Assembly: GCA_044892525.1 (NCBI GenBank)
Contig: CM097886.1
Location: 14,570,001-14,634,000, forward strand
DNA length: 64,000 nucleotides
Origin: Schmidtea polychroa
Lineage: Eukaryota
Direction: 5' to 3'
Under the pieces are notes generated by a model. It did not search any database. It was given only the letters and a program-made list of their open reading frames with translations, and was not told where the DNA came from. Each line of letters starts with the position of its first letter. The stretch's first letter is position 1. The position numbers and the translations under genes are program-made. Shown piece by piece: positions 5,128 through 64,000 of this stretch.

Positions 5128-5766
5128 TTATGAAATTATTTCATGTTTTAATTTTTTAGACATGTTTAAAATATCACCATTCAAATTATTATGACCTGCT
5201 TTCTTTGCTGCTAACAATTTTCTTAGTTGAATAAAAAGATTAATAAAAACTTTTCCATTAATATAATCGTGTTTTGTTACAAAATCCATTCCCTTTCCTT
5301 CTTTAACAACATAACCATTTTCATTTTGATTTAAATATTGATTTAAACCTTTTATATGTTTTGCATTTGATTTACCTCCCACCATTTTTATTAAATCTAA
5401 ATATATTTTAATTTCATTTTTATCATCTGAAGAATATCCTTTTATTAATTGATCCAAATCTTTTGTGTAATCTATATATAAACGTTGATTGTTGAAACTA
5501 TTTTGAGAACGAATATATACTTGACCATTATTATTTTCATATAATAGAAATCTTTGATTATTAATTGTTATAATTTGATATCCTTTATCAATAGAAAAAG
5601 TTGGTACAATTGTTGTAGGTAATTTTCCATTAATTGTTGTATCAACTTTGTATGGTTTTATATTTATCCCTAAATCTTCAGGTTCCAAATCCCAAGATTC
5701 CAATTGGTCTAATTGTTCTAAATGTCCAGATTCTAATTCTTTGGGTTTTAATTCTAATTCTTTCAA
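5128..5766 (-). CDS. Polinton hypothetical protein
   Basis: 212-codon open frame between the protease and the ATPase. Its C-terminus LRKLLAAKKAGHNNL..DILNM resembles a motif I recall from Polinton hypothetical proteins (recalled, not searched). Confidence 0.55.
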   Translation of the reverse strand: MKELELKPKELESGHLEQLDQLESWDLEPEDLGINIKPYKVDTTINGKLPTTIVPTFSIDKGYQIITINNQRFLLYENNNGQVYIRSQNSFNNQRLYIDYTKDLDQLIKGYSSDDKNEIKIYLDLIKMVGGKSNAKHIKGLNQYLNQNENGYVVKEGKGMDFVTKHDYINGKVFINLFIQLRKLLAAKKAGHNNLNGDILNMSKKLKHEIIS

Positions 5767-5861
5767 AGCTTTCGTTCATTTAAAGATTCTTCAGTCGTCA
5801 TTTTTTAATAAATAAAATGGTTCCATATATATATATATATATATAAAATTTTTATATATAA

Positions 5862-6543
5862 ATGGCTAGTTGGAATCCAATTTTAACGCGACATAAAAGT
5901 AAATTTAATAATAAAATATTTCCTCATAATTTTAGATTATTAATTGTTCGATTTTCAGGATGTGGAAAGAATGTACTTCTTTTGAGAATGTTACTTGGTT
6001 TTTTAGATTATAATAATTTAATATTTTATTCTATAACTATAAACTATAACTATAATGATTTTAGAATCAAACATTGCTAATAAAAATGATTATGTTAGTG
6101 ATGAATCAAGTTTCATTAATAAAACAAGTTTTAATAATGAATCAATACAGGTTTTATTCTCCAACAAACCTGAAGATGTATTACATTGTGATTTTCTTTC
6201 CAAAGATAAAAAGAATCTAGTTATATCTGATGATGTTGTAAATATGAAAAATCAAGAAATTCAAAAAAGTTATTTTACTCGAGGACGTCAGAATAATTGT
6301 AATGTGATTAACATCTTTCAAACTTTTATGCCTTGGATAAAAATTCAATTAAAAACAACTCCAATTATTTCATCTTTTTTAAATTAGATAAGCGTGACAA
6401 GAATATGATTTATAGTGATTTATTTACAAATGTTTAACCTGACAAGTACATGTTTAATGTGTTTGTCGCTAATCATTGGAAAAAAATACAATTATATTTA
6501 TTTGGATAGAGAAAAGGATGAGTTAAAGAAAAACCTGTTTTAA
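5862..6543 (+). pseudogene. Polinton A32/FtsK-like packaging ATPase, frameshifted
   Basis: FPHNFRLLIVRFSGCGKN (degenerate Walker A), NLVISDD (Walker B), YFTRGRQNNCNVI..FQ. At least two frameshifts. Confidence 0.9.
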
Positions 6544-6583
6544 ACTTGTATTTAAAATATTAAAAACTTGTTTTTAACAAAAT

Positions 6584-8480
6584 TTGATTTGTTAAAAACT
6601 TGATTTCTGTAATTCATTATTATAAAATCTACGTAATATTTCTTCATTATTTTCATCGATGATACCATATGTCATTGGAATTGTATGATGTATTTTATTT
6701 ATAATAAAAATTTCATTTGTCTATTTCGCTGTGAATCCTTTATCAAATTTATTTTTATATTTAAATATTTGTTGGGTTTTGAATTATTTCAAGTCGGTTC
6801 TCTCTGACTCCTGTGTTCTTTAAATCAAAACAATGAACGACCCAACGTATATTGAAACAACAGGTTCACAATTTATTATCACGCTACAATTACCAATCAA
6901 AGTTTTATACGATTCTCCGCTCGGCGTTGATGCTTTGCAAACAAATAATATTCACCTTTTAGTCCTTTAGATTCTCTCGATTCACGTTTTTCTCGGTTTC
7001 TGTTTGGTTTGATTCCTTTTCACCTCTCCGTATTCTTAATTCTATTCTTTTCCCTACTTTCCCTAATTCGTCTACCAACTTTTCCTACAGTCTAATTCTT
7101 CGAACCCTAGCTGAGGCAAAATGTCGATTTTCTCTGATTTTCCCTTTGCTTATATACTCCTCGAAATCAGGATGACAAATGGTTATTGCCGAGCCAATCT
7201 TTCGTTTGACATTTGCTCCTACGTATTTGCTTTGGCTGTCACCCGTAATGGTCCAACGAATCCATATAATTAATGGCCCTACCGGTCTTCCTACGCGCGC
7301 TATCTTCTCCTTACTCTTTTCCCATTAATCATTGTGTCAAACTAATGGGCCCAAATCTTCCTTCTGTTTGCTTTTCTTCTTGTTTACCCAGCTCGGGTTT
7401 CCTTTATCTCTCGGGTTCTCCATTGGCTCGGGTTTCCCATTAGCTCGGGTTTTCCATTAGCCAATTAATTAATTAATTAACGTTTTCTGTTTTCATACAT
7501 TTGAATGTTTTTCGACATTTCCTAACCATTTTCTGATAAATCCCTAACCATCATCTTGTTGACCATTAGCTAATCTATACCTGTCCCGTTTTTCCCATTC
7601 GATTTCGATGATTTTTCCATTTATTGATTTTTCTCGGATTTCCGGATACTTGCCTTTCGTAATTGCTTTTGGCATTTTCTAATACTGTTTCCATCACACT
7701 TTCCTTTACTATTGATTCTGTGCGCGATCCCGCTTTTATTTGTCTTTTTTCTTCGCTTACTTTCTATTTGAATTATTATCCTGAATTTTATTAAAATTTT
7801 TAATTTTAATTTACAGACCTCAACATATTCTTACTCTATCACCAATTTTAAACTTTGGTTTTTCTAATTCTTATTTTATAGCCAAAACTTGTTTTGGTTC
7901 TAAAACGGGGTTTGTAGAAGCTTTCCCTCCAAACAAGTTTGGAGAGAAAGAGCATTTAAAGGTTTTTCTTTAATAGAGCTATGTACATCATTATTATATT
8001 CATTTACCATCTTTTGTAACCATTCATTGTTCCATTTTTGTTTTCCAACAGCAGTAAAATATTTCCACATTTTATTTTTTAACTTTCTATTTAATCTTTC
8101 AACTACGACTGCTTTTCCTTTCTTTTCTGTTGAATATAATTTAATATCATTTTCTTGCAAAACCTTTGTAAAACTTTGTTATAAAATTCTGTTCCTTTAT
8201 CACCCCATAAATATTTTGGAATTCTTTGATATTCTTCAAATATATTTTCAAATGCTTCTGTAATAGAATATCCTGTTTCATTTTCTAAACATCTTGCAAA
8301 AGCAAATCTTGTATATAAATCTTTTATAGTTAAAATTATTTTATATTTTTCAGGGTCTGATGATTTGGTTGGCAAAAAGACTAAATCAGCAGACCAAGTA
8401 TGATCTTTTTCATAAACTTGAACTTTTAGATATTTTTTATTTTTTCTAAATTCATGGTATGATTCGTTAGCATATTTTAT
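6584..8480 (-). pseudogene. Polinton rve integrase, split by a solo LTR
   Basis: WSADLVF...ILTIKDLYTRFAFA...PKYLWGDKGTEFYNK...VVERLNR.LK. After excising 6,770-7,825 and one TSD copy the C-terminus reads KFKIGDRVRIFKYKNKFDKGFTAK*TNEIF...TY...FYNNELQK. Confidence 0.9.
6770..7825 (-). mobile_element. Solo LTR (1,056 bp), TSD TATT
   Basis: TGTTGGG...CCTCAACA with TATT at 6,766-6,769 and 7,826-7,829. Shares the GAGCTAATGGGAAACCC repeats and terminal motif with the 15,779 LTR, in opposite orientation. Confidence 0.9.
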
Positions 8481-8497
8481 TTGTGATTCTGTTGGGA

Positions 8498-9256
8498 TTA
8501 ATAAACTTTTATTAGTAAAACTTGTTTGCTAATAAAAGAATCAGTCTTGGATGCATTCTCGAGGTGTTTTTCAGTGTCTGCTTGTTCAATAATCTTTTTA
8601 TTAGCAACATCTTTTGCCATCCTTGGTACTCCTGCACCTATGAGAATCATGAAGATCTTACCCTTCATTGCTAATTTAACTAGAGCTCTTTGAATCTTTT
8701 CTTTGGTTGATGGATTTTGTATATTATTTAAATCATGTATTAAATTAACATCAGCAACATGTCTATCTCTAAGAATTTTTGAATTGTAAGCAATGTCATG
8801 TTTCAAAGCAGCTTGGTCAATTCTATTTATTGGTTCCTCTCCTTGTTTGGGATTATTATTTTCATCAAGTCTGATATCTAATCGTGTTCCTGGTCCAGTA
8901 TAGTTGTGTTTAAATAAATGTCTTTCACCTGGATATTTTTCAGTAGTAAAGGGTTTCAATAATGTTGATGTTAATTTTGGAGATTGTAAATCACCACCCT
9001 GTTTTTCAAAAATTTCAAAAGCAAATCTACTTGAAGGATCGAAATCTAACCATGGGATATTATTTGAAGATGAAATTATTTCACCTTCAAAATTATTTGA
9101 TGGAATATTATTATTATTTGATTGAGTTAAATTCTCTCTCTCTAAAGCAAGTTTAGATCGAGAGAGGTGTTTTTTAGTTTTAAGATGACTCGTTTTATGG
9201 TGTGTTGTAACATCACAATTACAAGTTTCACATCTCCAATAACGTTTAGTAGTCAT
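8498..9256 (-). CDS. Zinc-finger plus parvovirus-VP1u-type phospholipase A2 protein (adintovirus PLA2X-like)
   Basis: N-terminal CxxC...H..HL.TKKH. Ca-binding loop NYTGPGT, catalytic IDQAALKHDIAY and downstream RHVAD are all intact. Confidence 0.85.
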   Translation of the reverse strand: MTTKRYWRCETCNCDVTTHHKTSHLKTKKHLSRSKLALERENLTQSNNNNIPSNNFEGEIISSSNNIPWLDFDPSSRFAFEIFEKQGGDLQSPKLTSTLLKPFTTEKYPGERHLFKHNYTGPGTRLDIRLDENNNPKQGEEPINRIDQAALKHDIAYNSKILRDRHVADVNLIHDLNNIQNPSTKEKIQRALVKLAMKGKIFMILIGAGVPRMAKDVANKKIIEQADTEKHLENASKTDSFISKQVLLIKVY

Positions 9257-9344
9257 TTTTGAAAAGTTTAAATTTAATTATAATAATTTTAGTTTTATTA
9301 CTAAAAAACTTATTATTACTCCAAATAAGTTTGGAGAATTAAAC

Positions 9345-10619
9345 TTAATGTCCTCTAACATTCTCAATTATTGAAATCTTTCCACAATATAACTTCATTT
9401 CTATTTTCTTTTCTTCAAGAATTAATGTATATATTTTTGCTTTAAAATTAAAATCCTTTGTTATATGAAGAGTAACATCAACATTATTTATAGCTAATCT
9501 ATCATCTTGAACTGAAACATTTATACAGAATATAGAATACAAATTTTTGAAATCTTCTAAACTTAATTGTGGTTTTATTTTGAAGTCTTGGCATGTTTGA
9601 ATATAATTTACATATGGGAATATATTTTCATTGTTTTCTATATTAAACTCCATTCTATTTACTGGATAATTTAATTGAATTTGAATTGATTTTAATTTAT
9701 TAACTCCAATCTTTTGAATAAACAAGTTGTTATTTTTTTGAAAGGATGGATCTATTTCTTTGAATCCAATTAAAATATATCTTGGTCGATATGCTAAATT
9801 TGCAATCTTTATAGAGTATGTTGAACCTTCTCTCATGTCAAATACACTACAGATTCTATTTAAATAATTTACATTTATAGATTTGTTGGAATTTAATCTT
9901 TCCAGTAATTTAATTTCAGCGTGTGGATTTAATGCCCATTTAGATATATGTAATTCAAATGTTATTAATTTTAATTTACTTTTTGTATCTGCAGCTCCAA
10001 TAATATTTTATCATCTAATATTCTATTACAAAGTAATTCTATGAAAACATTATGGAGTATGTCATTATAGTTTTGAAGGAATCCAAATAAATGTATCAAT
10101 TCGAAATAACCTTCAAATTTTTTAGATTATATAGTTGAACTCGTTTATGATAACCATAATTTACATCTAAACCATCTTTGTCTAAATCACCATTATTTAC
10201 ATTAGGGATCCAACCTGTTAATTCACCATATTCATTTTTGTAATCACAACCAGTCAAAACAAAATTTAACATTGTAGAATATACACCTGGACTTGATATT
10301 TTTTTAATTTCTGATGATCCTAATTTTAATCTCATGCTGTTGAATAAATTTGGAAAGATATTATTTTCTAGGTTAATATCTTTGTTTGCTTCAATCTCTA
10401 ATTCAATTTTGTAATATAATTTTGCATTACAAATATCTATAGGGTTTGATGTTTGAAGATATTAAAAAACTATATCACCAACACGATTTAAATTTGAAAT
10501 GGAACCAGAGGTTGGACAGATTTTAAGTACATCATTTTCTTGATTTCATGAATAAACTGTTTATCATAATCAAGATTTAATTTATTTTTTTCTAAAATCT
10601 CGAGATTTATATTGTTCAT
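9345..10619 (-). pseudogene. Polinton major capsid protein (double jelly-roll), frameshifted
   Basis: ATG at 10,619; ...LNRVGDIVF...NNIFPNLFNSMRLKLG..EIKK..SPGVYSTM; RPRYILIGFK...NNNLF...YP...F...FKNLYSIFCINVS. The ORF-track pieces 10,096-10,335 and 9,345-9,836 are fragments of it. Confidence 0.8.
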
Positions 10620-30399: not shown

Positions 30400-31172
30400 T
30401 GACTGATGCCTGGCAAACAATTGCCTTTATGCCTTTTGTGAAACAAAGTTTTTGGCAATGACGCTATGAAACCATCTAAGCTGCAGGATCATCTGAGAAG
30501 ATGTCATCCTGATAAAACATTTAAATGCCCTCTATTCAGATTTTGAAACTAGGTTTCAGAATGTTTTGACTATGATAATACCACCGTGGATTATTAACCC
30601 ATATGGTGACATAGAAGAAACGAATGTCATAATACAAGAGAAACAGACTGAAGTACAAACGAAGAACTTTAGGTTAAGTTTAAAAACGGATATCAGCAAT
30701 TCTGGCTGCAAAAAACATACCCGTTACTTATCCCGTATTATGGAATATAGCGAGGAAATTTTCAATTTCCTTTCCATAGTCATACCTAGTGGAAAGGGGG
30801 TTCAGCACTGTTACGAATCTCCTAACGAAAAAAAGAAACAGGCTGGACATCATTAGCCGTGGAGATTTAAGATTAAACCTTACAAAATTGACGCCAAATG
30901 TTGATAATTTTTTATTAAAGCATCAGGTTCATCCTTCACACTAAAACATTTACTTATTGCTTAGTTTATTTTATGTTTATTTTATGTTACGCATATTTTA
31001 TATAACAGAAACAAAATTTTATTTTGAGTAGTTTTAATTTAAATTCAATTAATAAATGTATAAAACTTAACATGTGATTTTACTTTAAGTTTTTTACACT
31101 AAACGGTCAGAAATTTACAAAAAATCAATATCAGGCAAGGGGTATACGACACAAAATATTTGGGAACATCTG
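30400..31172 (+). mobile_element. hAT (Buster/SPIN-like) transposase 3' relic with right TIR
   Basis: PPWIINPY...IQEK.TE.QT; frameshifted PS...GFSA...RGDLRL.LT...NVD.....HQVHPSH; TIR ...TTTGGGAACATCTG followed by GGCTAATA. Confidence 0.8.
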
Positions 31173-32698
31173 GGCTAATACTTCATAAAGTCAGTGAAAC
31201 GGTGACGGTATTTTTTAATAGTTAGATAGACAGTTAGTGAAATTTGGCTGCGATTTGGAAAATATAATCTAATACAACTTCTTCAGAGGATTAGTAAGGC
31301 GTTCACAGAAGCACAAATAACAGACCAACGGTTATTGCGACACAAGTTTATTGAAGCTCTTCCAAAGGAAATTAAGCTCATAATCACAAGTTTTTAAAAA
31401 AAGTCTACGGAACAATTGTCTGCAATAACAGACGGGATGATGGCAGGCATGGAAAATGAAACACCATATTCGAATTACAATTTTAAAATCCAGGCATTAA
31501 TGGATGAAATCGCGGAATTAAAAGAAGAAATATTCTATTTAAAGGAAACTCCCAAGAAATCAAAATGCCTTAGCTTCTATCACAGTATTTATGGAAAAAA
31601 CGCCAGGAAATGTGACAAACTGAAAGATGGATCCCGATGTGCTTCATATATGCCGGGAGATGGAAAAACGCTTCGAAATTAACCACCGTCGAAGCTTGTA
31701 TTCAAAAGCTGTATACAGTAAATCAAATCTTCATTTTAATTAATAAGACAAATTTTTAGTGGAAACAGGAGCATCTGTTTCATGTTTGCCACGAAAATTT
31801 TTCAAGCCAGAAATTCCGTGCTCATCTCGACTTACAGCTGCTAATAGTACTCCAATAAAATGTTATGGGAATAGGAAGATTGATTTACGAATCGATGACA
31901 AAACAATTAGTTGGCTTTTCCATGTATGCGATGTATCACAGCCTATTCTTGGTGCACATTTTCTAGCAGCACATCACGCTTTAATCGACTACAAGTTGAA
32001 AAGAGTTTCAATTAATTCGATAGTTGATAATAATCTTTTGAGTTACTTCAACAAACCAGAATGTAGCGCCAAGATCACATGACATTGTTTTAAATGATAT
32101 CGTCAAGACTATTATATGGCGACAAATTAAAAGCTGCCAAAGATTGGTTTAATAAAATGGTAGACACTGGCAAATGTCGATTATCAAACTCACCGATTTC
32201 TTTTTCACTGGTCGTTGTAAATCAAAATGGAAAATAGATTTTGCGGTAATTAAAGAAATCTGAATACAGAAACCGTCCCTGATAGATATTCAATTCCAAG
32301 AATCGAGGATATATTGTAGATTGTGAGAAATAAAAAATACTTCTCTACTATCGACCTTGGAAAAGAGTATCTACAAATTCCAATGAACGAAAATGACATT
32401 CCAAAGACAACAATAACTACTCCGTTTGATATGTACGAATTTCTTTTTATGTCATTTTTATTACGAAATGCCACATCGACTTTTCAAAGAACAATTGACG
32501 CAATACTGTGGAAATTTCCATTCGCAAGAGCATACTTGGATGCAACAGATACAGAAGAGGATCATGACAACCATTTAAAAATAATTGCAAATGAATTAAA
32601 TAAAGTTGGATTGTTAATAAATGTAAGGAAATGCTAAAAATCTGAAGTAGATTTTTTGGGCCATCACATATCAAGAACTGAAATTTGTATATATGGTT

Positions 32699-32831
32699 AC
32701 GTTCCCAATAGTGTACCTGGGTATAAATAACCAATTAGAGTACCCGGGTATACTAATTGGATTTATTATTTTTTCAGAATATTGCCATTTTCCAATTAGA
32801 GTACCCGGGTATTATATTCAGAACTTTACGG
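32699..32831. mobile_element. Small pogo-like MITE relic inside the RT
   Basis: Two CCAATTAGAGTACCCGGGTAT copies and end ...AGAACTTTACGG|TA, interrupting RT between FLGHHIS and RRYLGIINFY. Confidence 0.5.
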
Positions 32832-34094
32832 TAAGAAGATATTTAGGTATAATTAATTTTTATAATCGTTTCATTTCAGAGTCTGCAAATAAATTGGAAT
32901 TATTATATAAACTCATCAATTCTAAATCCAAAAAGATAATTTGGACGGAGGAAAGTCTAAAATGTTTTGATGAAGCGAAACAATTATTACAAAAAACGAC
33001 TGAACTCGCGTTATTTCATGAATCAGAACCTACCACCTTGAGAACTGATGCCTCAGGATCAGGTATTGGAGTAGTAAAACGGTCGACCTATATCATTTTT
33101 TAGCAGACTGTTAACGAAGACAGAATCTAGATACAGTACATACGACAGATTATTACTTCCAATATACAAAGCTTGCAAGCACTTCCATCATTTTCTCGAA
33201 GCCACTGAATTTGTGATACAGACGAATCACAAACCAATCGCCCAACGACAACAAAAGGACCCAAGCAACAGACAATGCAAGATAGTTTACTGCCATGGAA
33301 AAAAAAACAAATTGCTGATGCACTCTCTAGAACAGACGCTCAATTAGTTTCAGAAAACGTTTACCCGTGACCGAATGAAGAGATACTACAAAAGCAGAAA
33401 GAAGAGATGAAGCATAATAAAGATGAATTATTAATGAAGAATGGGAAATTAATATTACCACCGAGTCTCAGAAGAGAAGTTTTTCAGATGACTCACAATG
33501 TCGCTCATCCAGGAATACGAAGGACCAAAAAGTTGATGTTGAGCTCATATACATGGCACAAGATGACAAAGGATGTCCAGATGTGGTGTCAGCAATGCGA
33601 TTCCTGCTCAAAATCAAAGGTATATCTTCATATCAAAGCACCATTGCAAACCTTCCCAGCAACTAGTCGGTTTCATACACTTCACATGGATATTGTTGGA
33701 GCTCTTTCAGCAAATAACGTAAGTCCTATTTACTCACAATGATCGATAGACAAACATCATGGCCTGAGATATTGGCCATTAAAAACATAAATTCAGAAAC
33801 CGTGGCAAAATCACTAATTGGATTTTCCGATATGGAATCCCATCTGAAATCGTAACAGATCACGATAGGCAATTTACAAGCTCTTTATTCCAGTATCATC
33901 CTCAAGCAAACGGAAAAGTAGAAAGATTACTTCGGCACAGAAAGCATTTGGATGTGATCTTGCTGTACCAGGAATTATGTTAAATTCCCCAAAAGAAGCT
34001 TCTCCACATCAATTAAAAGAAATTATTGAGATTCAGAATAATCGAAAGACCATTGCAAGATGGTATGACGATCCCAAAATCTATTAAGGACTGT

Positions 34095-35221: not shown

Positions 35222-37399
35222 ATATTTCAAGCTATTGAATGAGGATAATGTATCAGTTGATCGTCTAAAACCAGCATGGCAATCAAGTTAGGAGTGGAGA
35301 ATTGTTGTGATTAGAAAAGCATTAATCACACAAAACCCTTTTAACAAAATATTAATTTAATTTTGTTTCAATAATTAAGAATTGTGAAATTATAAATATT
35401 TGAATTTTGTTAAATCATTATGTCAAATCATAACAACTACCATAACAAATTTATTAATCTTAAAACAGATCCTGTGATAGTAGGCCTGGACTCGTATATT
35501 ACTTAATCAAGAAAGCATTCTGTTGAAGCCTCAGTGTTGAACTCTTAGTGTCTTATACTTAGTCTTAAGGTTAGGTATTGAATTAAGTATGTGCTCTAGT
35601 TGCATTATAGATCATTAATTACTCAAATTGTTTGTCGTCCTGGCTCACTGGACTCGATACGGCAAACCCTTAATGTGTTGTAACCTTGAGCTAACGTACA
35701 AAATAAAGGTTCGCCGTGGCCTCAGTCGATTTAATTATAAACGTTAACACTACACGTAGACAACGTCGATACTGATCATGTTGCTTATACCTGGGCCTAA
35801 AATCAGTTTTTACCCAACTCATGGAACAACATAAACTTAAATTTTTTATTCACTTTAGATGTACTGAATTTCAATGAACTGAAAAAGTTAACTCATTTCT
35901 TGACCAACGAATTTTGAGTATTGACATACACATAAAAATGGTAATCAATGAAAAAATGTTTACTAAACTGCTGAGCTATATAATAAAAGTGTTGAAATTG
36001 ACCAAAACTGCTAAGTTGGAGATTCTAGTTATAAAATTTTTAAATAAAGTTAAAAATTTCGTATTTACTGAAAAAATTAAATAATTTACGTAGGTTTAAG
36101 TACATAATCAAGATTGTAAGGCTGTGAAAATAGTAAAATTAAAATTAAGTAGAATGTAATTAAAAAAAAATAACGGTCTACAAAATTTTACAGTAAACCA
36201 ATCGACCACTTCGCGCGAGAACAATATAGTAGAGTCCAGAAGTAGAATGTTCCGGTAAACCGGCCTGGTGTCTAATTCATCACTAGCAACTAACGCGAAC
36301 ACAGAATGTTATCAGTGAAGGGTTAGAATAACATGAAAACTTAACTGTAAGACAAACAGTAATCGACATACAATCATTGTTAGATGCTATAACATTCAAT
36401 TCTTCAGTCATCAAATAAATTACTAAGACTAAATAAATCCAAAATTATATTTCAATAAATCTACTTATCTGAACTTCGAATTTTTGTCCAGGGTCATAGT
36501 TTTATAACATCCTGGGACATTTTCTTTTTATAAATTTTAATTTCAACCAAATATCAACATACCACATTCATACTTGAATTGCAATTTTATTAAAAATTAT
36601 TTTCAAAATTAAAATCAAAATATTCATTTTAATTTTAAACCATTTTAATTTTAATATATTTTAAATAATTTAAGTTTCGCTTTTATTTTTACAAAATTTA
36701 ATCATAAAATAATTCTAATTTAATATTTTAATTTTAACTCCTCACAGTCTTAATCATAGTTTTTCTAGTTTAAATTAAATCTATTTTAGCTATTTATAAT
36801 TGGTAGACCATTTCAACTAAATAGATTAGTTTTTACAAATTAAGTGTAAGGTGTACGGTTAATTAATTATAATGCCGAATCGTTTTAACTAATAGTACTT
36901 AAAAGTCATTTTAACTATTTAAATTTACAACTCCGTTTAACTCATCGTTTACTTGGATCGTTTTAATTAAATAGTTTTTTTTCTTTTCAATAAATTTGGA
37001 TTTAAATCTTTAGGGGATTGGCTTTGATGATTTATGGCAGGGGTGCCCATAAGGTCGATCACGATCTACCGGTAGATCGCGAAGGATTTTTTAGTAGATC
37101 TTCATAAAAATATTTTTTATATAAATTTAGATTTTATATAAAATTTCTGTTTTATGCTTAAATTTTTTGTCAATTTTCATGTTCTGTCTTCCATTTCTAT
37201 GGTAATACTAAATAACATTTTTTAATTTTGATTTCACCATTTCCAAAATGTTATTTAGTTTAATTTAGTTTAGGTAAATATTATGTAAGGTAGGTAAATA
37301 TTATGTAAGTATTAAAAAAGTAGATCGCATACACATTTTGGATGTGAATGTAGCTCTCCTAGAAAAATTAGTGGGCACCCCTGCTGTAGTGTATTTGAC

Positions 37400-37900
37400 A
37401 TGAGAGAAGGTTCAACATACTCTATAAAGATTGCAAATTTAGCATATCGACCAAGATATATTTTAATTGGATTCAAAGATATAGATCCATCCTTTCAAAA
37501 AAATAACAACTTGTTTATTCAAAAGATTGGAGTTAATAAATTAAAATCAATTCAAATTCAATTGAATAATAGTTATTATCCAGTAAATAGAATGGAGTTT
37601 AATATAGAAAACAATGAAAATATATTCCCATATGTAAATTATATTCAAACATGCCAAGACTTCAAAATAAAACCACAATTAAGTTTAGAAGATTTCAAAA
37701 ATTTGTATTCTATATTCTGTATAAATGTTTCAGTTCAAGATGATAGATTAGCTATAAATAATGTTGATGTTACTCTTCATATAACAAAGGATTTTAATTT
37801 TAAAGCAAAAATATATACATTAATTCTTGAAGAAAAGAAAATAGAAATGAAGTTATATGGTGGAAAGATTTCAATAATTGAGAATGTTAGAGGACATTAA
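37400..37900 (+). pseudogene. Captured Polinton capsid C-terminal part
   Basis: Near-identical to 9,345-9,836; retains NSY that the 9.6-kb copy lacks. Confidence 0.9.
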
Positions 37901-37987
37901 GTTTAATTCTCCAAACTTATTTGGAGAAATAAACAAGTTTTAGTAATAAAACTAAAATTATTATAATTAAATTTAAACTTTTTAAAA

Positions 37988-38542
37988 ATGACTACTAAAC
38001 GTTATTGGAGATGTGAAACTTGTAATTGTGATGTTACAACACACCATAAAGCGAATCATCTTAAAACTAAAAAACACCTCTCTCGATCTGAACTTGCTTT
38101 AGAGAGAGAGAATTTAACTCAATCAAATAATAATAATATTCCTACAAATAATTTTGAAGGTGAAATAATTTCATCTTCAAATAATATCCCATGGTTAGAT
38201 TTCGATCCTTCAAGTAGATTTGCTTTTGAAATTTTTGAAAAACAGGGTGGTGATTTACAATCTCCAAAATTAACATCAACATTATTGAAACCCTTTACTA
38301 CTGAAAAATATCCAGGTGAAAGACATTTATTTAAACACAACTATACTGGACCAGGAACACGATTAGATATCAGACTTGATGAAAATAATAATCCCAAACA
38401 AGGAGAGGAACCAATAAATAGAATTGACCAAGCTGCTTTGAAACATGACATTGCTTACAATTCAAAAATTCTTAGAGATAGACATGTTGCTGATGTTAAT
38501 TTAATACATCATCAACCAAAGAAAAGTTTCAAAGAGCTCTAG
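37988..38542 (+). pseudogene. Captured ZnF-PLA2 gene, 3' frameshift caused by a 25-nt deletion
   Basis: Near-identical to 8,498-9,256; catalytic motifs intact; deletion between CAT microhomologies. Confidence 0.88.
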
Positions 38543-38983
38543 TTAAATTAGCAATGAAGGGTAAGATCTTCATGATCGCATACACATTTTGGATGTGAAT
38601 GTAGCTCTCCTAGAAAAATTAGTGGGCACCCCTGATTTATGGTAAGGAGTTATCCAAATTTAGTTAATGGATACTAATAGACAAGTCAACATACCGGCTT
38701 AATTCGTATTCGACGGTTAATTTCATTTTAACTAGACTTGGGTAGCGAAGTTAATTTACTCTAATTTCGGTTAAAATTCTAGTTGATAATAAAAGTTGAG
38801 TTAACTATCAATCAATATTTTTTTCTCTAAAGGGTCCTAACCTGTCGTCAATAGGTGTGAGATTTTCCTGTCCAAATTGTTTGCGTACTGATTTCGCTAG
38901 GATCAAATCTAAGTAAATATTAGTGTACAAAGCTCATCGTCTCATCATATATTCTTACCATCTAAATATAATAATGTGGATTT

Positions 38984-40840: not shown

Positions 40841-41689
40841 GAAAGTCTACATAATTAAGGTTTGTTGACGAAGATAGTATTTTTAAAGATTTATAAATGT
40901 CTGGTATAGATTTAAATATTTTAATATGAATGACAGAAATGAATCTAAACATTTAAGCACAGAATCGAAATTGAAGTCTTCTTGTTTCATGTACCTTAGA
41001 AACGGCATGATTACATTTCATCCAGATAAATAAATATTACTGTCCATCACTTTACATCCATCACATAAACAATTCCTAGACTATCATTGTTGTTGAAAAA
41101 CATCGGTTTGGTTTGTCCTTAATATCACTTAAGCAAATTTTCAAATCGGATCGCTATTCTAATTAATATTTACATTAGATTTAAATATTCATCTACATGA
41201 GAGGGAAGGCTTTCCCGTTTACCGGCAGGCATTATTTCATGTTCATTCAATTTATTCTAATACTATTCAAATTAATTTTTTATTTAAACCTCATTTAAAT
41301 TAAACTTCGATTGAATTAATATTTTCTTTAATAATAAATGGAGTTTACCTATGTTCGTTAATCAAATCTCGTTCCCAACACTCGGAAAGTTCTCGAGGGT
41401 ATACATGAAATAGTGCTGGTAGGGTATGAAGTGGAGATCGGCTGGAATCCGGCCATCATGTAGAAATGTTTAATGCTAAAATTTGAGTCAAATTCAATAT
41501 GTGATTTTTCGATTAGATGTCTGATTACTTATATCCCCATTTGCTGTTTTGCGAATCACTTTATAACTACTTTTCCAAATTTTCAGTAAATGTCTGAACC
41601 AAATCTTCCCAAGGCTGGTCCAAAGCCGTGTTTTTTCATCTTTTTTCTCTTCGTAAAACTTTAATATTAATTTCCTAGTGTCAGATTGA

Positions 41690-42797
41690 TTCTTTGGTAA
41701 TATAAATTCTTTTTGCTTAATATATTCTCGAATGGAATCACTACCCGTAATCCATTTTATGGAAAAACCATCTTTAGCAGCTAACCGGGCAACAATTTCA
41801 GGGAGTGATTGTTTTTTTATGAAATTTGATATAGATGATTGGCATATTGTAATTCTTTTGGGACTATTTAAACATTCCGTATTTTTGGATTCTTCTATAG
41901 TTTTTTTATCTAGATAAATATCATGAACTCTTTCTAGATGTATTTCTAATCCAGTTGTATTTGACCCTTTGCATGAAATTTTTCTTGGACAGTGTTTGCA
42001 TTGAGTTGATTCTTTTTGTGCTAGTTTTTTGTAATGTTTCCATACTTCCGAATGATTAAAATAATGATCGAATAAAAAATAACAATAAAATGATAATACT
42101 TATTTTATACGAAATATCCAAAGCAAATATTATTATAATTACCGTTAAAATGAATTTAAAATGTTAATATCGAAATCTGCAGGTCACAATTTTAAAAATA
42201 AATTGATAATTCATTTTGCAAGTTGTTAAAAACTATATCGAGTATCTAAATATGTAGAAAGAAACTGATCGTATTTAGTAAGTTTATAATAATAGAAAAA
42301 TATAAGAAACAACTAAATTGGTTTTATAACATGTAAGAATGCAAGCTGGACGTTTATTTGTTATGTATTCTGTCGACAGATATGTGAAATACAATTGAGA
42401 TGGCCCATTGTTTTCGCACGTACCTTCACCGTCGCCAAAGGGTTAATATTTTATGCATATCCATAACACATTAACACATCCTTTGGAAAACGAGTAATGT
42501 TTACGTTAAAAAATAAATTTAAATTTACGATGGCGAATGCTGTCGGGTTTGGAAATTGGATAAAAATATTTTATCTAATTTCCAGATTGTGTAGTTTTTG
42601 AAGGAGGGCTGACCAAAAATAAAAATAAAAAAATCTTTCTACATTTGCAAAAAAAGTCGACAAATAAAATGTAAAATATATTAACTACATTTTTAATCAA
42701 AAAGTCTCGAGTCCCGGGAATTTTTTAATAAAAGTCCCGAGACTCGAGACAGTTAAAAACCCCAAAAGTCTCGGAACGTCTCGACGCAGAATCCCTA
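41690..42797 (-). mobile_element. 5' part of a BED-finger hAT-like element
   Basis: SEVWKHY...QCKHC...SCKGSNTTGLEIHLERVH; SLPEIVARLAAKDGFS; terminus TAGGGATTCTGCG at 42,797 with CGAGAC subterminal repeats. Confidence 0.75.
42400..42442. mobile_element. piggyBac-like end
   Basis: CACCGTCGCCAAAGGG|TTAA; partner end not found. Confidence 0.4.
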
Positions 42798-43001: not shown

Positions 43002-45162
43002 GCTATGGCGGAGAATAAGGGTACTGATTTTGTAAATGAATAAATAATGTAATATAATATAACGAATAACTCCATATAACATGACTATTCCTAATAATAT
43101 GATCATAATAAATAGTTAAACCATTAATATTTAATGATTTTTTAAATTCTTTTATATCAATAATACAATTTCTATAATAATTTTTTCTTATAAATCACCC
43201 CAATGAAAAAAAGAGCATTTACAATTGCTTTTAAGAAAGAAGTGATTTCATATATGGAACTTGGAAATTCATGTTATAAGGCAAAAAACTTCGGCTACAG
43301 AGATAGTTGCTAGTATAGTCAATCTATGTTTCAGCAGTGGTGTAAGAAAAAAGAAGCGATTAGAGCACAATCTGCATCGATGAAAAGAGCGTCTGGAGGC
43401 GGAAGAAAGTCTTTGCTGGGATCTCTTGAAGAATTAATTTTTGATGAAATTATTGAATTAAGAATAATGAAAATAAGGTTACCCGAACTTTCATATCCGA
43501 TCGAGATATTACATTAGGAGAACAAAATAATATTGACATCAAAGCTTCAGGCCGCTGGATTGATGGTTTCATGAAAAGAAAGTGATTGTCGCTTAGAAGA
43601 ACCAACTTTACGAATTTATTAGATTATACGTTAATTTTCCGTACCATTAATTATATGGGTTTTTTAAGAGCTACGATCCTTAATTTTGACTTGTCGAAAA
43701 CATTGTTAATGGATGAAACAGCTGTTTATTTCGAAGATAATAGGACCCATACAGTTGATTTAAAAGGACGGAGACACGTAATAATGAAATCAACAGGGTT
43801 TTCTTCCATGCGTATAACAGTAATTGCGTCAATTTGCGCTAATGGAAGAAAAGCTGTACTTCTTGATATTCACAAAGGAAAATATACTTTTGCAAATATT
43901 AATTCGCTCAACAATATTTATAGCATTACACAAGAAAAAGCATGGGTAAATCAAGATTTAATAATCGCATGGATAAATTTAATGTTACCCATGTTTGATG
44001 CTAGTCAAGGAAAATGTATTGTATGGGATTCTTGCCGTGCTCATATTTCAGAACGTGTAAAAGAGCACTGCAGAAAAGAAATATATAACTTGTGGTAATA
44101 TCCGGTGGAATTTGCAAGCAGGAGATATTGGAATTTTTAAAGAATTTAAAGACAGAATTTCCAGTTTTATTATTATTTGGAAAAACTCCGAGAAAGGCGA
44201 ATACAAAAGACGTGGAAATCCCAGGGCTCCCAGCCAAGGCTTGTGAATCTTTGGATTAGTAATGCTTGAAGCTCTATGTCTATTCAAAACATAAAAAACT
44301 CTATTCAATCAGCTGGATTTTATGGAGAATTTCGGATTGGCATATATCTAAAAAAGATATTTATGGTGAGAGATTCCGAAATGAATTTATTAATTCGATA
44401 TTTGAAGATTCAACACCAACTCAGAACGAGCATGATTTTGAACCAGATGTATTTGATCTAGCTGATGAATGATTAAAAATACAATTATGTTTTTTATATT
44501 TCTTTAAAGTCAAATAGTATGACTAATTTACTTAACCATATTATTGGAGTTATCCGTTAAATATTTTTATGGAACTATGGATTTGTTTGAGCTTTTAGCA
44601 ATAATAAATGATGGTATGAAACCAATTTTATGGTTTATTGAACACAGGTTAATAAGAGAACGGATATTATGTGAAATATGTGGGAACACCTGAATCTTTG
44701 AATTCCTTTAAATGAATTTGTCGTTCTTGAAAAGAAAATTCAAAATACACGTTTAGAAGAGGTGTAGGAAGCTTTTTTGAATCAGCTAAAATTGCGTTGA
44801 AAAAATTTTTAGTTTTATTAAATAAGCAAAATTAGAAAAAAACAGTAATATTGCTATTTTAGGGATGTGTTCACACTATTTACTTGGAAATTGTTCTGAA
44901 TTTGGCGGAGATAGACGAGTCAAAGTATATGAAAATGAAATCAAACCGGGGGAATCCGAATGAAAATTCAGGATGAAAAAACGAGTTTTCGGTATTTTCG
45001 ATATGAACACTAAATTTTTTCATTTGGAATAGGTAAGTAACATGAAAAAAATACATATACAATTCAAATATTTTTTTATATTTTAGTTTAGTCACAAGAT
45101 ACTTATATTATTTATTTATTCACTTATTTTCAAAATCAGTACCCTTATTCTCCACCATAGGC
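43002..45162 (+). mobile_element. Merlin (IS1595-like) defective element carrying a nested pogo
   Basis: TIR CTATGGCGGAGAATAAGGGTACTGATTTTG / CAAAATCAGTACCCTTATTCTCCACCATAG; probable 9-bp TSD TAAAATCGT/TAAAATCAT; relics CEICG...GSFFESAKI and EIDESKYMKMKSNRG. Confidence 0.75.
43062..44557 (+). mobile_element. pogo-family (CENP-B HTH plus DDE_1) transposon, pseudogenised
   Basis: ATG 43,203 MKKRAFTIAFKKEVI; GGGRKS; MDETAVYF; VWDSCRAH; short TIRs ACGAATAACTCCA/TGGAGTTATCCGT between TA dinucleotides. Confidence 0.85.
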
Positions 45163-48289: not shown

Positions 48290-48644
48290 TTTATGTTCCC
48301 TTAAAAGTTGATCTCTTATTTATTATATCTACTATATTAATTATATATACTAAAATTATATAGAATGTATGTGCGTGTAATTAATGTAACTTCATTGAGC
48401 ATGCGTATGTGTGTCTGTATGTTTAAATAATTAATTAAATTATATATTATGTGTATAACATATATCTAATAAAACTATATAGTATATATGAGGACAATGA
48501 AAGATTCTAAAAGTTTTAATTAGAAATTTTGTTAAATTTTAAAAATATTTTTATCGAAGAATATTTTAAAAGAAAGATTGAAATTTGTTTAAATAAGAAA
48601 CAAAGGATCAGATAAGTTTTGAGTGTATAATAATTTAATAAAAT

Positions 48645-50304
48645 TGTTGGTTACTTAGGGGTGTGCCCTTTTTACAATTTAAAATACGTTAGGGGTAATC
48701 ATAATCGTTCGACTCTTTCCTAAGCACCTCCATGACTATTGCAATTTAAACCATTTGTGTACCCATGGCGACGACCATGTTGGTACTGTACACAAAGGTG
48801 AAAAAACAATGAGCAGGTGAGCTCTATTACTAAAACTACTCCCCATTGGATTTTCTTTTCGGGTTCTAGACTGCCGATAGAAGGTCTTACGTCCTTATCC
48901 ACTATATATGCTATTTTTGGATCGATGTTGGTCCTCAATTACGGGTATTTTTAATTGTTCTCTTATAAAATTTTGTGCAGGGATCCGTCCTTATTTCCCA
49001 GCTAGTAATTATTGTTCTACACTTCCTACAATATTTAAATTATCCTTTGAAAAATTTGCGCAGGGATTGGCCCTTATTTTCAAGTTAATCCACACTTGCC
49101 ATGATATTTAAATTGTTCTTCAAAGATTTTGAGCAGGGATCTGCCTGTGTTTCTAATCCTGAGCTGTCGGAAAAATTACATAAATCTAACTTTATCCATC
49201 TTCAACTGGTCTCAACTATTCCATCTTTACTCCTAACTCACTTATGTCTATAAAACATAAAGGTGACTAAGCCACCTACATTATCTAAATCTAAATAAAA
49301 TCCTAAACGACCTAAAATGACATTACACTCCCAAATCATTCCTATCACTATCACTGTCCTCTAACTCGATGGACTCAACCGGCGAAATATCTGCCGACCA
49401 ACAGCACGTAGTGCCGCCCGTCCACAAACTTTTCCCCAGCCCAGACCATCGACACAATCAACAAATCATATAATTGAATTCAATAAAACTATGAATTAGA
49501 ATAAATGAATTTAAACCATTAAAAAGGATCACAAAAAAAAATTGAACCGAGACATTTATTAATTAAATTTATTAATTAAAATACTTCATAAAAATTACAG
49601 AAAACAATAACAAATAAATTACCACATCCACGTTGGCATAAAATCGAAACTGAGAGTTCTGCAAATTAAGTGGCTATGTTGAAAAAAGAGAGAGAGAGAG
49701 AGTTTTTCAATTGAATTTGTGATCAGTATTTATACTGATTTTGAATGCGTACTCTATCCAATCAGAGTGCGAGAATTATTGAATTGATTTTGCACACATG
49801 CATGAATGTGTGTAATTATTTATTTGTTTTAATTTCATAAATTTAATTAATTTCTTATTTAATTTTTATTAATTTTAATTTTACAAATTTTATAATTTAA
49901 CTAATTTGAGTTATATTAATTTTTATTAATTTAAACATTTTTATTCTTTAAATTTAATAAGTTAAATAACCATTTAATTCTATAAACTTTACAATTTACA
50001 TAATGCTAATTAATTTTATTATTTTTGACGATTTAATTTTTATATTATTTAAATAATTTTCAACTAATTCCATTTTCTATTTTATTATTTTTCTATTTAA
50101 ATTTTTAAGTGTTGAATTTTCTGTTAAATTTATTTATCTCTTTATTCTATTATACGGGGTTTATTGATTCTTAATGTGTAATGTAGTTTATTTTATTTAT
50201 TTTAAATTAAACCTTGGTCATAAATTTTTTCAACTTTGCGGTTTTTGTGTTAGGTATTTTCGATCGATTAAAACAAACTCTCAGTTCTCGTTTTCAACCC
50301 AACA
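48645..50304 (-). repeat. 3' LTR (1,660 bp)
   Basis: TGTTGG...CCCAACA; near-identical to 62,310-63,975. Confidence 0.95.
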
Positions 50305-50529
50305 AATCACTCCGGGACCCGTTAAAATTGCGTCCCGCAATTCTGTTAGACATATGAATTTCGCAGATCATAGTCTATTACATTTCCATTAACCCATAAA
50401 CATACTATAACAGTTTAAGACATGTTAAAATTGAATTATCAGAAAAAGGTCTAAGCTAAAATTCAAGCAGTTGCCACGTACAGTGACTGGTCATAATACA
50501 CATACATACTTATACCATGTCCAAACTCA

Positions 50530-53002: not shown

Positions 53003-54566
53003 ACTTGGTTCTATTATCGATTGACTTAATGATTTGGTGTTGAATTCTGGTTGATTGTTGATACTTGGCTGTTATCTTGATTGATTGATTTACCTTACTA
53101 GAAAAATATCACTCCTCCTTACCGTTTATTATCTTTATAAATTATAATTTATATATTATATAACATAATTGCAATATTTTTGTTTTAGTTTCCTTGGGCA
53201 TCTCTTAATATTTGTTCCCTCGTTCCCTTAGTTTACACCTTTATTCTCATGGTCTACTTAATTTTCTCAATCCTTATTTATTTTAATTCGTGTTCCTTTT
53301 CCTCGTTTCTATGGTTTTCTTGGCTTCGAATGACTATCTCTCGATCTATTAACTTGTATTACCTCTTAGTTTTTCTTCATTACTATGGTACTTGTTCTGT
53401 TCTCGGTTGTTTCAGTTTTAATCATTTCTCGAGTTTACTATAACGGTTACCCTTTATATTTCCTCCTTTCATTAACTATTATTGTTATCGTTGCCGTTTT
53501 TCTTGACTTAGTTCATTGTTTTACTTAGCGGTTTCTCTTCTTAAGTTTGAAACTATATTCACAGTTGTACTTGTATTGCCTCTCATCTGTACTTGACTCA
53601 GTCCTTGTCATTTCTATAACTCATTCTTAACTAGAATTTCCATTATTCTCCTTATATTCTCATTCATTCTCTCTTACCCGATTATCTAATATCAATTCAT
53701 TTCTTGTCATTTCTACTAATATATCAAAATTTACCAATCTTATCATTCCTTAACTTGCCACTCTTTACCTTACAAATTTATAACTCGTTCGTTTCTGCAT
53801 TCAAAACAATCAACTGAAACAAAATTCTTATCCCATTGGTCTCCGCTTTCGAGACTTATTAGAAATTCTTAATTTCCACGTTTCTACTTTTGAAACTTCA
53901 AAAATCATTATCTGGTCCGCTTCTACTTTTGAAACTTCCGAATGATGTACAATTCCTATTTCGTCGGTTGTGAATAACCATAATCCTAAATTTTCGTCGA
54001 TGTTGAATTATCTATGTGGTCGTATCAATTATCTATAGGGTCGTATCAATTATCTATAATTATCAATTATAATATCAATTGGTCGTTGTCCATTGCTGCT
54101 AATTACCCCTCCTCATTTTCCTAGTATACTTTTGCGCAATTTCGCCATTTTACTTATCCTTTTATATCTAAGTCACCTATTACTCTTTACTCGGTTCTAC
54201 TCTGGAACCAAAAACAAGATTCGTTTATCCGGTTTAAACCAAAAAAAAATTCTGTAGCACCTTGTCTACTTACCTGGGATCCCCTTTAATTAGTTAATTT
54301 TTTTTTTCCTCTTTTACTCATCATCTATTCACACTTATTCTTTATTTTCATTATCTCCTTAATTCATTTTCCTTTTTTCTCTTCCTTTTCCACTATAATC
54401 TTATTATCTTTTCTACGAGCTCGTTTATTTCCTCTCTAAATTCAAATTCCCATATGTAATTCCAATTCGTTTCTAGCTAGCTTTAATATTCTATCTTACC
54501 GTAACTTTAGCTTCGATATGTTATCTCATTGTAGCTTAACTGCTATCTCTCGCTTTTCTAGGCCTT

Positions 54567-62302: not shown

Positions 62303-62309
62303 AAAATCA

Positions 62310-63975: not shown

Positions 63976-64000
63976 AAATTGATGGAATTATTTAGTGATT

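What the first reader, a model, noticed from the sequence alone, without database searches (positions are those of the whole stretch)
37030..38642. Composite hAT transposon that has captured and moved viral capsid and PLA2 genes
Seen: TSD ATTTATGG - complete 346-bp MITE - 1.19-kb Polinton fragment (matching 9,852-8,646) - duplicate of the last 61 bp of the MITE - ATTTATGG. The inner right end is followed by CTGTAGTG, a Buster-type target that is native capsid sequence. The distal junction has a 3-nt GAT microhomology. Inference: the MITE first inserted in a Polinton, acquired a second right end downstream, and the three-ended unit then transposed as one piece. This is Pack-type transduction of endogenous virus genes by a DNA transposon, carrying intact PLA2 catalytic motifs. 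The cargo keeps a 9-nt segment absent from the local Polinton, so the donor was another copy or the local copy lost it later.
Basis: partly seen in the sequence, partly recalled or inferred. Interest (0 to 1): 0.85.

Follow-up and report, generated by a model that had tools for sequence, protein, structure and literature searches.

The report
hAT MITE carrying Polinton-like gene fragments
A small cut-and-paste transposon (a Buster-type hAT MITE) sits here with 1.2 kb of a virus-like Polinton element trapped between its normal ends and an extra 61-bp copy of its right end, most likely dragged from another site by a known kind of aberrant transposition; the trapped genes are only broken-off fragments, so this is a neat but ordinary case.

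Summary
The structure is exactly as described. An 8-bp duplication (ATTTATGG) flanks a 346-bp MITE, then 1,193 bp matching window 9852-8646 (0.9% substitutions plus indels), then an exact 61-bp copy of the MITE right end. The inner junction is flush with the MITE terminus. The distal junction shares 3 nt (GAT).

The MITE is a deletion derivative of a hAT element. A metagenome contig (L003) has 91-93% identical ends around a 624-aa transposase of the GTF2IRD2/ZBED5 (Buster/Charlie) lineage. All three independent termini abut nnnTAnnn sites, which make up 10% of random positions.

The cargo is not two genes. It holds the C-terminal ~160 of ~416 residues of a double-jelly-roll capsid protein and the N-terminal part of a ~430-aa PLA2-integrase fusion, which also carries one frameshifting deletion.

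Best explanation (about 0.65): the MITE sat in another copy of the element, and hAT alternative transposition carried the adjacent DNA here. This is as in maize Ac/fAc macrotransposons and composite insertions, and in the Pack-TYPE model.

Main rival (about 0.2): the cargo was copied in at this site as filler during break repair.

No further copies, donor or empty site could be found with the collections available. Interest is modest.

The parts
37030..37037 (.). Left copy of the 8-bp target-site duplication ATTTATGG (TA at positions 4-5)
   Evidence: chance of 8/8 about 5e-5
37038..37383 (+). Complete 346-bp hAT MITE. It has perfect 12-bp terminal inverted repeats at 37038-37049 and 37372-37383, and an internal 19-nt tandem duplication.
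   Evidence: The ends are 91-93% identical to the ends of the autonomous element L003.
37384..38576 (+). 1,193-bp cargo copied from a Polinton-like element. It begins with CTGTAGTG directly after the MITE terminus.
   Evidence: 96.2% identity to window 9852-8646. 11 substitutions and indels of 9, 1, 2 and 22 nt.
37397..37900 (+). C-terminal fragment of the double-jelly-roll major capsid protein gene, equal to residues ~255-414 of the 416-aa relative. It is in a single open frame and its 5' part is missing.
   Evidence: PF21738 profile positions 171-314 of 316; tblastn against the L001 capsid protein; alignment A2
37988..38576 (+). N-terminal fragment of the PLA2-integrase gene. It has an N-terminal cysteine/histidine-rich segment and a PLA2-like domain, and the integrase part is absent. 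It is broken once by a frameshifting deletion relative to the local copy and to L001, and is cut off at the distal junction.
   Evidence: PF08398; relatives are ~430-aa PLA2+rve fusions
38574..38634 (+). Extra right end: an exact copy of the last 61 bp of the MITE, including the 12-bp terminal repeat at 38623-38634. Its first 3 nt (GAT) are shared with the cargo source.
38635..38642 (.). Right copy of the 8-bp target-site duplication ATTTATGG
8646..9852 (-). Segment of the local Polinton-like copy that is homologous to the cargo. There is no MITE and no doubled octamer at the CTGTAGTG site.
9369..10583 (-). Local major capsid protein gene, decayed: 3 frame changes, 1 stop, and one in-frame 9-nt deletion
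6595..9277 (-). Local PLA2-integrase gene, decayed: 4 frame changes, 1 stop, and about 1.1 kb of extra DNA
5868..6540 (+). Local A32-type packaging ATPase gene, decayed: 2 frame changes and 2 stops
5149..5736 (-). Homologue of the 213-aa protein of unknown function that follows the integrase gene in the relative L001

Best explanation
The unit is a product of hAT alternative transposition, that is, a macrotransposon or composite insertion.

Proposed sequence of events:
1. A Buster-lineage hAT MITE had inserted into the capsid gene of some copy of a Polinton-like element at the octamer CTGTAGTG. That copy was not the local one as it now stands.
2. A transposase supplied in trans then joined the MITE's left end and a second right end to a new target, ATTTATGG. 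This carried along the whole MITE and the 1.19 kb of Polinton-like DNA that lay to its right.
3. The second right end was connected to the cargo by a repair-type junction with 3 nt of microhomology. There are two ways this could have happened:
   (a) before the move, giving a three-ended unit like maize Ac plus fractured Ac;
   (b) during the move, when re-replicated or broken ends were joined, as in maize composite insertions.

The cargo is passive. It holds two gene fragments with no evidence of function.

Shown directly: the anatomy, the hAT/Buster identity, the fragmentary cargo, and the decay of the local copy.
Inferred: the former MITE-in-Polinton state, and the joint move.
For: - One 8-bp duplication flanks the left terminus and the outer right terminus. 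Its chance probability is 5e-5.
- The inner junction is flush with the MITE terminus, with no loss, filler or overlap. It abuts an octamer with TA at positions 4-5, as do the outer duplication and the flank of the related autonomous element L003. Only 10% of octamers in the window or in the element fit that pattern. nnnTAnnn is the published Buster consensus (PMC3517528).
- The autonomous relative encodes a 624-aa transposase whose named relatives are GTF2IRD2-like and ZBED5-like proteins, many with PF05699.
- The distal junction has 3-nt microhomology. This matches the 3-4-bp junctions inside maize composite insertions, which also carry 8-bp duplications (PMC4270019).
- Macrotransposons bounded by an Ac 5' end and a 3' end can excise and reinsert (PMC9910405).
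- Pack-TYPE elements, including Pack-hAT, are proposed to arise by mobilisation of neighbouring insertions (PMC8903248).
- The flanks of the unit show no similarity to the Polinton-like element.
Against: - There is only one copy of the unit. No donor copy with a MITE at CTGTAGTG was found, and no empty-site allele, because the genome itself is not in the searchable collections.
- A 99%-similar source copy lies only 27.5 kb away with no doubled octamer at the site. That is what in-situ templated repair from a nearby sequence would predict. Under transduction it needs chance, a local hop from an allele, or a repaired donor.
- The TA-site argument rests on a single junction, with a likelihood ratio of roughly 9.
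- It is unknown whether 61 bp of right end suffices for transposase recognition. This matters only for version (a).
Confidence: 0.65

Rival explanations
1. In-situ capture of filler DNA. A plain MITE inserted at ATTTATGG. Later the transposase cut only its right end, or an excision aborted. The flank end copied 61 bp of the right end from the sister or homologue, then switched template at GAT to a nearby Polinton-like copy and copied 1.19 kb. It was then end-joined to the intact MITE terminus. On this reading the composite never moved.
For: - There is 3-nt microhomology at the distal junction.
- A suitable template lies 27.5 kb away in cis, differs by only 0.9% in substitutions, and shows no sign of ever having hosted the MITE.
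- The two right-end copies are identical, 61/61.
- Only one transposition event is needed.
Against: - The inner junction has no microhomology, trimming or filler, and lies exactly at the transposon terminus.
- It falls on an nnnTAnnn octamer, which a random break would hit only 10% of the time.
- Each copy has its own derived indel (9 nt lost in the local copy, 22 nt lost in the cargo) plus 11 substitutions. So either time has passed since the copying or the template was another copy.
Confidence: 0.2
2. Assembly artefact. Reads from a plain MITE at this locus and from a MITE-bearing Polinton-like copy elsewhere were joined through the repeated MITE sequence.
For: - The window contains an N run (20887-21054), so the assembly is scaffolded.
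- The 346-bp MITE is longer than a typical short read, so the path through it could be ambiguous.
Against: - The 61-bp outer end is short enough for single short reads to link the cargo to the right flank.
- The right flank carries the same 8-bp duplication as the left flank, which ties both ends of the unit to one insertion site.
- Both junction sequences must exist somewhere in the reads.
Confidence: 0.05
3. Independent events. A Polinton-like fragment was already at this site, and a MITE and a truncated MITE landed on either side of it separately.
For: The region is dense with transposon remnants.
Against: - A MITE inserting next to the fragment would be flanked by its own duplication on both sides. 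Instead its left flank is ATTTATGG and its right flank is CTGTAGTG.
- The matching octamers at the two outer ends would then be a coincidence of about 5e-5.
Confidence: 0.02

Closest known systems
Maize Ac/fAc macrotransposons and composite insertions (alternative transposition; Huang and Dooner 2008 as cited in PMC9910405; Zhang et al. 2014, PMC4270019)
   Same: It is the same superfamily (hAT). A full element plus a terminal fragment of a second end brackets ordinary DNA. The whole unit is flanked by one 8-bp duplication. The internal junction has 3-4 bp of microhomology.
   Different: Here the element is a 346-bp MITE of the Buster lineage, not Ac, and probably in an animal-like host. The second end is only 61 bp. 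The cargo is 1.2 kb of an endogenous virus-like element. The event is inferred from one sequence, not observed genetically.
Pack-TYPE transposons / transduplication (Pack-MULE, Pack-CACTA, Pack-hAT; PMC8903248) and hAT capture of histone H3 in fungi (PMC6710886)
   Same: A non-autonomous DNA transposon has gene fragments between its termini. The proposed origin is mobilisation of neighbouring insertions using the two outer ends.
   Different: Those families are defined by amplified multi-copy elements, and here only one copy is known. The inner terminus is still intact here, whereas in the model it is deleted or mutated. The cargo comes from another mobile element, not from a host gene.
Mar and other Buster-family hAT MITEs (PMC3517528)
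   Same: It has an 8-bp duplication with the nnnTAnnn pattern and short terminal repeats beginning CAG. It originated by internal deletion of an autonomous element related to GTF2IRD2-like proteins.
   Different: It belongs to a different family with different ends, and this copy carries cargo and a third terminus.
Polintons/Mavericks and adintoviruses with a PLA2 gene (PLA2X; PMC8502044, PMC3671162)
   Same: The source element family has a double-jelly-roll capsid protein, an A32-type ATPase, an rve integrase, a parvovirus-type PLA2 domain and, in relatives, a protein-primed PolB.
   Different: In this family the PLA2 domain is fused to the N-terminus of the integrase. In adintoviruses it sits in a separate virion protein with a pX-like tail. 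The local copy is decayed and has no detectable polymerase or protease.

Membership tests
hAT superfamily, Buster lineage, non-autonomous (MITE) | 8-bp target-site duplication | tested here: met
   ATTTATGG on both sides of the unit
hAT superfamily, Buster lineage, non-autonomous (MITE) | Short terminal inverted repeats and no coding capacity | tested here: met
   Perfect 12-bp repeats, seen 3 times against 0.02 expected. The 346-bp body holds no gene-length frame: only the ends of two ORFs (54 and 194 aa) that lie mainly in the cargo reach into its last ~70 bp.
hAT superfamily, Buster lineage, non-autonomous (MITE) | Ends shared with an autonomous element that encodes a hAT transposase | tested here: met
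   L003 ends are 91-93% identical. Its 624-aa ORF has relatives named GTF2IRD2-like and ZBED5-like, many with PF05699. The L003 protein itself scores below Pfam cut-offs, and the left terminus of L003 is cut off by the contig end.
hAT superfamily, Buster lineage, non-autonomous (MITE) | Target preference nnnTAnnn | tested here: met
   3 of 3 termini, against a 10% background. Consensus taken from PMC3517528.
hAT superfamily, Buster lineage, non-autonomous (MITE) | Many copies in the genome | not testable with these tools
   There is only this copy in the window, and the genome is not in the collections.
hAT macrotransposon / composite insertion | A left and a right terminus in transposition-competent orientation bracket non-transposon DNA, with one duplication around the whole unit | tested here: met
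hAT macrotransposon / composite insertion | The cargo was contiguous with one transposon end at the donor site | tested here: inconclusive
   The junction is flush and on a consensus target octamer, but no donor was found.
hAT macrotransposon / composite insertion | Repair-type internal junction | tested here: met
   3-nt microhomology GAT; compare PMC4270019
hAT macrotransposon / composite insertion | Evidence of movement: an empty site, or further copies with other duplications | not testable with these tools
   Searches of viral, metagenome and prokaryote-genome collections found none. Exact-protein look-ups also found none.
Pack-TYPE / transduplicating element | Gene-derived sequence between the termini of a non-autonomous element | tested here: met
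   Capsid and PLA2-integrase fragments
Pack-TYPE / transduplicating element | Amplified family of copies that carry the same cargo | not testable with these tools
   Single copy known
Polinton/Maverick (source of the cargo) | Protein-primed family B DNA polymerase | tested here: not met
   There is no match in the window to the polymerase candidates of relatives or to Pfam. It is present in the relative L005 (PF03175). It is probably present in L001, from a weak alignment at E 0.02-0.024 and motif recognition from my own knowledge.
Polinton/Maverick (source of the cargo) | Retrovirus-type (rve) integrase | tested here: met
   PF00665 piece; full-length match to the L001 PLA2-integrase, broken
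Polinton/Maverick (source of the cargo) | Double-jelly-roll major capsid protein and A32/FtsK-type packaging ATPase | tested here: met
   PF21738; ATPase homologue of the L001 Pox_A32-type protein. Both are broken.
Polinton/Maverick (source of the cargo) | Maturation protease, terminal inverted repeats and a short duplication at the element's ends | tested here: inconclusive
   No protease hit was seen in the ORFs scanned. The ends of the element were not identified. The inverted repeats found belong to other repeats.
Parvovirus-type PLA2 domain (PF08398) | Profile match above the curated threshold, with the calcium-loop and catalytic-pair region retained | tested here: met
   34.2 bits against 23.9, covering profile positions 4-67 of 80. 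This stretch is 63% identical to L001. The end of the domain is lost to the frameshift. PDB sequence hits to capsid-protein chains are marginal at E 0.27. Enzyme activity was not tested.

The most novel reading that the evidence does not exclude
The three-ended unit is a still-competent Pack-type hAT element that has multiplied elsewhere in this genome. Its truncated capsid and PLA2 reading frames, or RNAs made from them, might then interfere with the Polinton-like elements they derive from. That would be a transposon-borne decoy against an endogenous virus. A more modest version is that this is the first sequence-level trace of composite-insertion-type alternative transposition by a Buster-lineage hAT outside plants.
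Probability: 0.05. Interest if true: 0.7.

Novelty: new member of a known kind. Interest (0 to 1): 0.3.

Why it matters
If the transduction reading holds, hAT alternative transposition also operates with Buster-lineage MITEs in what is probably an animal-like genome. That mechanism has been worked out genetically in maize and inferred for plant Pack-TYPE elements. It would also show that it can scatter pieces of endogenous virus-like elements. That is useful for annotation: stray capsid or PLA2 fragments need not mark a Polinton insertion. It also gives a clean textbook-style example with both junctions preserved. It opens no new question. The cargo is fragmentary, shows no selective constraint, and is known from one copy only.

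Tried and rejected
- Exact-protein look-ups of both cargo ORFs found nothing on record.
- I scanned for the MITE right end in metagenome, viral and prokaryote-genome collections, and for both junctions in viral contigs. The only hit was L003, the autonomous relative. No further MITE or composite copy was found.
- The longer ENA contig carrying the same transposase had no DNA available, so the left terminus and the duplication of the autonomous element could not be checked.
- BLAST of the flanks and of a modelled empty site against the window found no paralogous empty site.
- tblastn with the transposase found no autonomous copy in the window, only a distant hAT C-terminal remnant at 4365-4667.
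- PHROGs gave nothing for the cargo proteins, and Rfam found nothing in the window.
- My first idea was that inverted repeats near 7.4 and 16.1 kb bound the local element. I rejected it once tblastn showed that the element's genes extend beyond one arm.
- The organism could not be identified. The best protein relative of the local PLA2 ORF is only 72% identical. I ran no further search on it.
- I did not attempt structure prediction, because the Pfam matches were above threshold and the cargo pieces are partial domains.
Full report
**Observation**

- ATTTATGG occurs at 37030-37037 and again at 38635-38642.
- Between them lies a 346-bp element (37038-37383) with perfect 12-bp terminal inverted repeats. 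That 12-mer is found three times in the window against 0.02 expected.
- Next come 1,193 bp (37384-38576) that align with 9852-8646 on the minus strand at 96.2%.
- Last is an exact 61-bp copy (38574-38634) of the element's right end.
- An 8/8 flank match has a chance probability of about 5e-5 at this composition.
- The inner junction is the exact element terminus followed by CTGTAGTG. This is native sequence in the local copy, the preceding bases differ, and there is no overlap.
- The distal junction shares GAT between the source sequence and the element.

**What the MITE is**

A scan of metagenome contigs with 22 nt of the right end returned one contig, L003 (2,520 bp).
- Its two ends are 91-93% identical to the subterminal regions of the MITE, and a further 24-nt internal stretch is identical.
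- Between its ends lies a 624-aa open reading frame.
- That protein scores only below threshold in Pfam (DUF4371, Spin-doc zinc finger) and has no PDB sequence relative.
- It does have more than a thousand relatives. [quoted passage not shown]
- These names mark the Buster/Charlie branch of hAT. PMC3517528 places GTF2IRD2-like proteins with Buster elements.

The MITE is therefore an internal-deletion derivative of an autonomous hAT element. No autonomous copy lies in the window. The right end of L003 is followed by ATGTATAC. All three independent termini of this family thus abut an octamer with TA at positions 4-5, the published Buster consensus. Only 10% of octamers in the window or in the source element fit that pattern.

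**What the cargo is**

The first cargo ORF (37400-37900) matches the second half of the double-jelly-roll-like domain PF21738, profile positions 171-314 of 316. The second ORF (37988-38542) matches the parvovirus-type PLA2 domain PF08398. Both are above the curated cut-offs.

Relatives of the local PLA2 ORF are mostly ~430-aa proteins that combine PF08398 with the rve integrase core PF00665. The 12-kb contig L001 shows the gene order packaging ATPase, 163-aa protein, 416-aa capsid protein, 98-aa protein, 434-aa PLA2-integrase.

Measured against these relatives, the cargo contains two pieces:
- residues ~255-414 of the capsid protein;
- the N-terminal part of the PLA2-integrase, which matches the relative up to about residue 118 of 434.

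So two gene fragments were captured, not two genes.

Relative to the local copy, the cargo has 11 substitutions (0.9%) and four or five indels, depending on whether the 9 nt are counted as one gap or as 4+5.
- One is a 22-nt deletion inside the PLA2 frame. It is derived, because the local copy and L001 stay homologous in frame through that segment.
- The 9 nt that the cargo keeps are ancestral, and the local copy has lost them.
- The part of the PLA2 domain that holds the calcium-binding loop and the catalytic pair lies upstream of the frameshift and is 63% identical to L001. Assigning those residues rests on my own knowledge of the family.
- In the frames that are open in both copies, codon differences are 2 synonymous and 6 non-synonymous. 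That gives no sign of constraint.

**The local source element**

By tblastn with the proteins of L001, the window holds four pieces of the element:
- a capsid gene at 9369-10583 (-);
- a PLA2-integrase gene at 6595-9277 (-);
- an A32-type ATPase gene at 5868-6540 (+);
- a homologue of a 213-aa protein at 5149-5736 (-).

All three recognisable genes are decayed:
- capsid: 3 frame changes and 1 stop, plus the in-frame deletion;
- PLA2-integrase: 4 frame changes, 1 stop, and about 1.1 kb of extra DNA;
- ATPase: 2 frame changes and 2 stops.

No polymerase or protease was detected. A more distant relative, L005, encodes PF03175 (protein-primed PolB) next to the ATPase and the PLA2-integrase. The 779-aa protein of L001 aligns weakly with that polymerase, at E 0.02-0.024. 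So the family is of the Polinton/Maverick type, while the local copy is a partial relic. PLA2 domains in Polintons and adintoviruses are already described (PMC3671162, PMC8502044). The fusion to the integrase is different from the adintovirus PLA2X arrangement.

**Mechanism**

Two facts have to be explained together. One 8-bp duplication surrounds the left terminus and the outer right terminus. The inner right terminus is joined, flush and on a consensus target octamer, to DNA of another mobile element.

The most economical reading has three parts. The MITE once sat in a copy of the Polinton-like element at CTGTAGTG. A transposase then used the MITE's left end and a second right end. The segment between them came to ATTTATGG.

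This is the behaviour known from maize:
- Ac plus a fractured Ac form macrotransposons that excise and reinsert (PMC9910405).
- Alternative transposition during replication creates composite insertions. These have transposon termini, an 8-bp duplication, flanking DNA of variable length, and an internal junction with 0-4 bp of microhomology (PMC4270019).
- It is also the model proposed for Pack-TYPE elements, including Pack-hAT (PMC8903248).

The one-step version needs one event fewer, and it does not require a 61-bp end to be recognised by the transposase.

The local copy is not the donor as it stands, because it has a single CTGTAGTG and no footprint. An allele of it, or a repaired donor, cannot be excluded.

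**Rivals**

- In-situ filler capture. This would be an aborted excision at the right end of a plain MITE, repair synthesis that copied 61 bp of the right end, a template switch at GAT to the nearby copy, and end-joining to the intact terminus. It explains the microhomology, the closeness of a 99%-similar template and the absence of a footprint there. It predicts neither the flush terminus nor the TA octamer (10% by chance). I put it at about 0.2.
- Assembly artefact. This is unlikely. The 61-bp end is short enough to be spanned by single reads, and the matching duplication ties both flanks to one insertion.
- Independent insertions. This is excluded by the flanks of the inner MITE and the 5e-5 coincidence it would need.

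**Limits**

- Only one copy of the unit is known.
- The genome is not in the searchable collections: the best protein relative is 72% identical, there are no exact-protein records, and there are no further DNA matches.
- The organism was not identified. The nearest named relatives of the transposase and of the PLA2 domain are from animals. The autonomous hAT relative comes from environmental assemblies.

1. I later learned that it lies inside the interrupted integrase gene. I do not repeat those coordinates here and have deleted nothing.
2. The statements that depend on motif recognition are marked as my own knowledge.

**Verdict**

The thing is a new example of a known kind of event, of modest interest.

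Noticed in passing
window 6595-9277 (-); L001 8585-9889; L002 686-1834; L005 6892-8121: In this family of Polinton-like elements the parvovirus-type PLA2 domain is fused to the N-terminus of the rve integrase, giving ~380-440-aa proteins with dozens of relatives in metagenomes. In adintoviruses it sits instead in a separate virion protein (PLA2X). A membrane-active domain on an integrase is unusual, and I did not find it described in the papers read.
   Followed up: partly
L003/L004 (JGI contig Ga0307474_10074623, 2,520 bp): This is an apparently intact autonomous hAT element with a 624-aa transposase (P0058). The identical protein is recorded in JGI, ENA and Logan assemblies. Its ends are 91-93% identical to the window's MITE, so the host or a close relative occurs in environmental samples.
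   Followed up: partly
window 5149-10583: The local Polinton-like copy is a decayed relic. Its gene order differs from L001 (the ATPase is inverted and lies downstream of the integrase). It has no detectable polymerase or protease. Its integrase gene holds about 1.1 kb of extra DNA that includes a 17-nt tandem repeat. The same repeat also occurs in inverted orientation near 16.0-16.1 kb.
   Followed up: partly
window 48640-50306 and 62303-63977: These are two 1.67-kb direct repeats, 99.3% identical and 13.7 kb apart. The second runs to within 23 bases of the window end. They could be long terminal repeats of a large retroelement or a segmental duplication.
   Followed up: no
window 54566-55012: Tandem array of a 74-bp unit, about 6 copies at 97-99% identity.
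   Followed up: no
window 14426-16933 and 18540-19136: Three collinear blocks (236, 123 and 251 bp, 91-97% identical) are repeated. They lie compactly at 18.5-19.1 kb but are spread over 2.5 kb at 14.4-16.9 kb. This suggests a small repeat that has been interrupted by insertions in one copy.
   Followed up: no
window 2341-3898 (-) and 30497-33739 (+): Two decayed LTR-retrotransposon pol regions (RT RNase H and integrase zinc-binding domains), each split over several frames.
   Followed up: no
window 41497-42099 (-), 43586-44095 (+), 4365-4667 (+): Other DNA-transposon remnants: a BED zinc-finger ORF, a DDE_3 (Tc1/mariner-type) transposase piece, and a distant hAT C-terminal remnant (35% identical to P0058). 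No evident host gene was seen in the ORFs of 80 aa or more that were scanned.
   Followed up: no
window 38557-38576 compared with 37093-37106: The native Polinton-like sequence just before the distal junction contains a 10-nt match (AGATCTTCAT) to a left-subterminal repeat motif of the MITE. It may be chance, or it may have favoured pairing at the junction.
   Followed up: no
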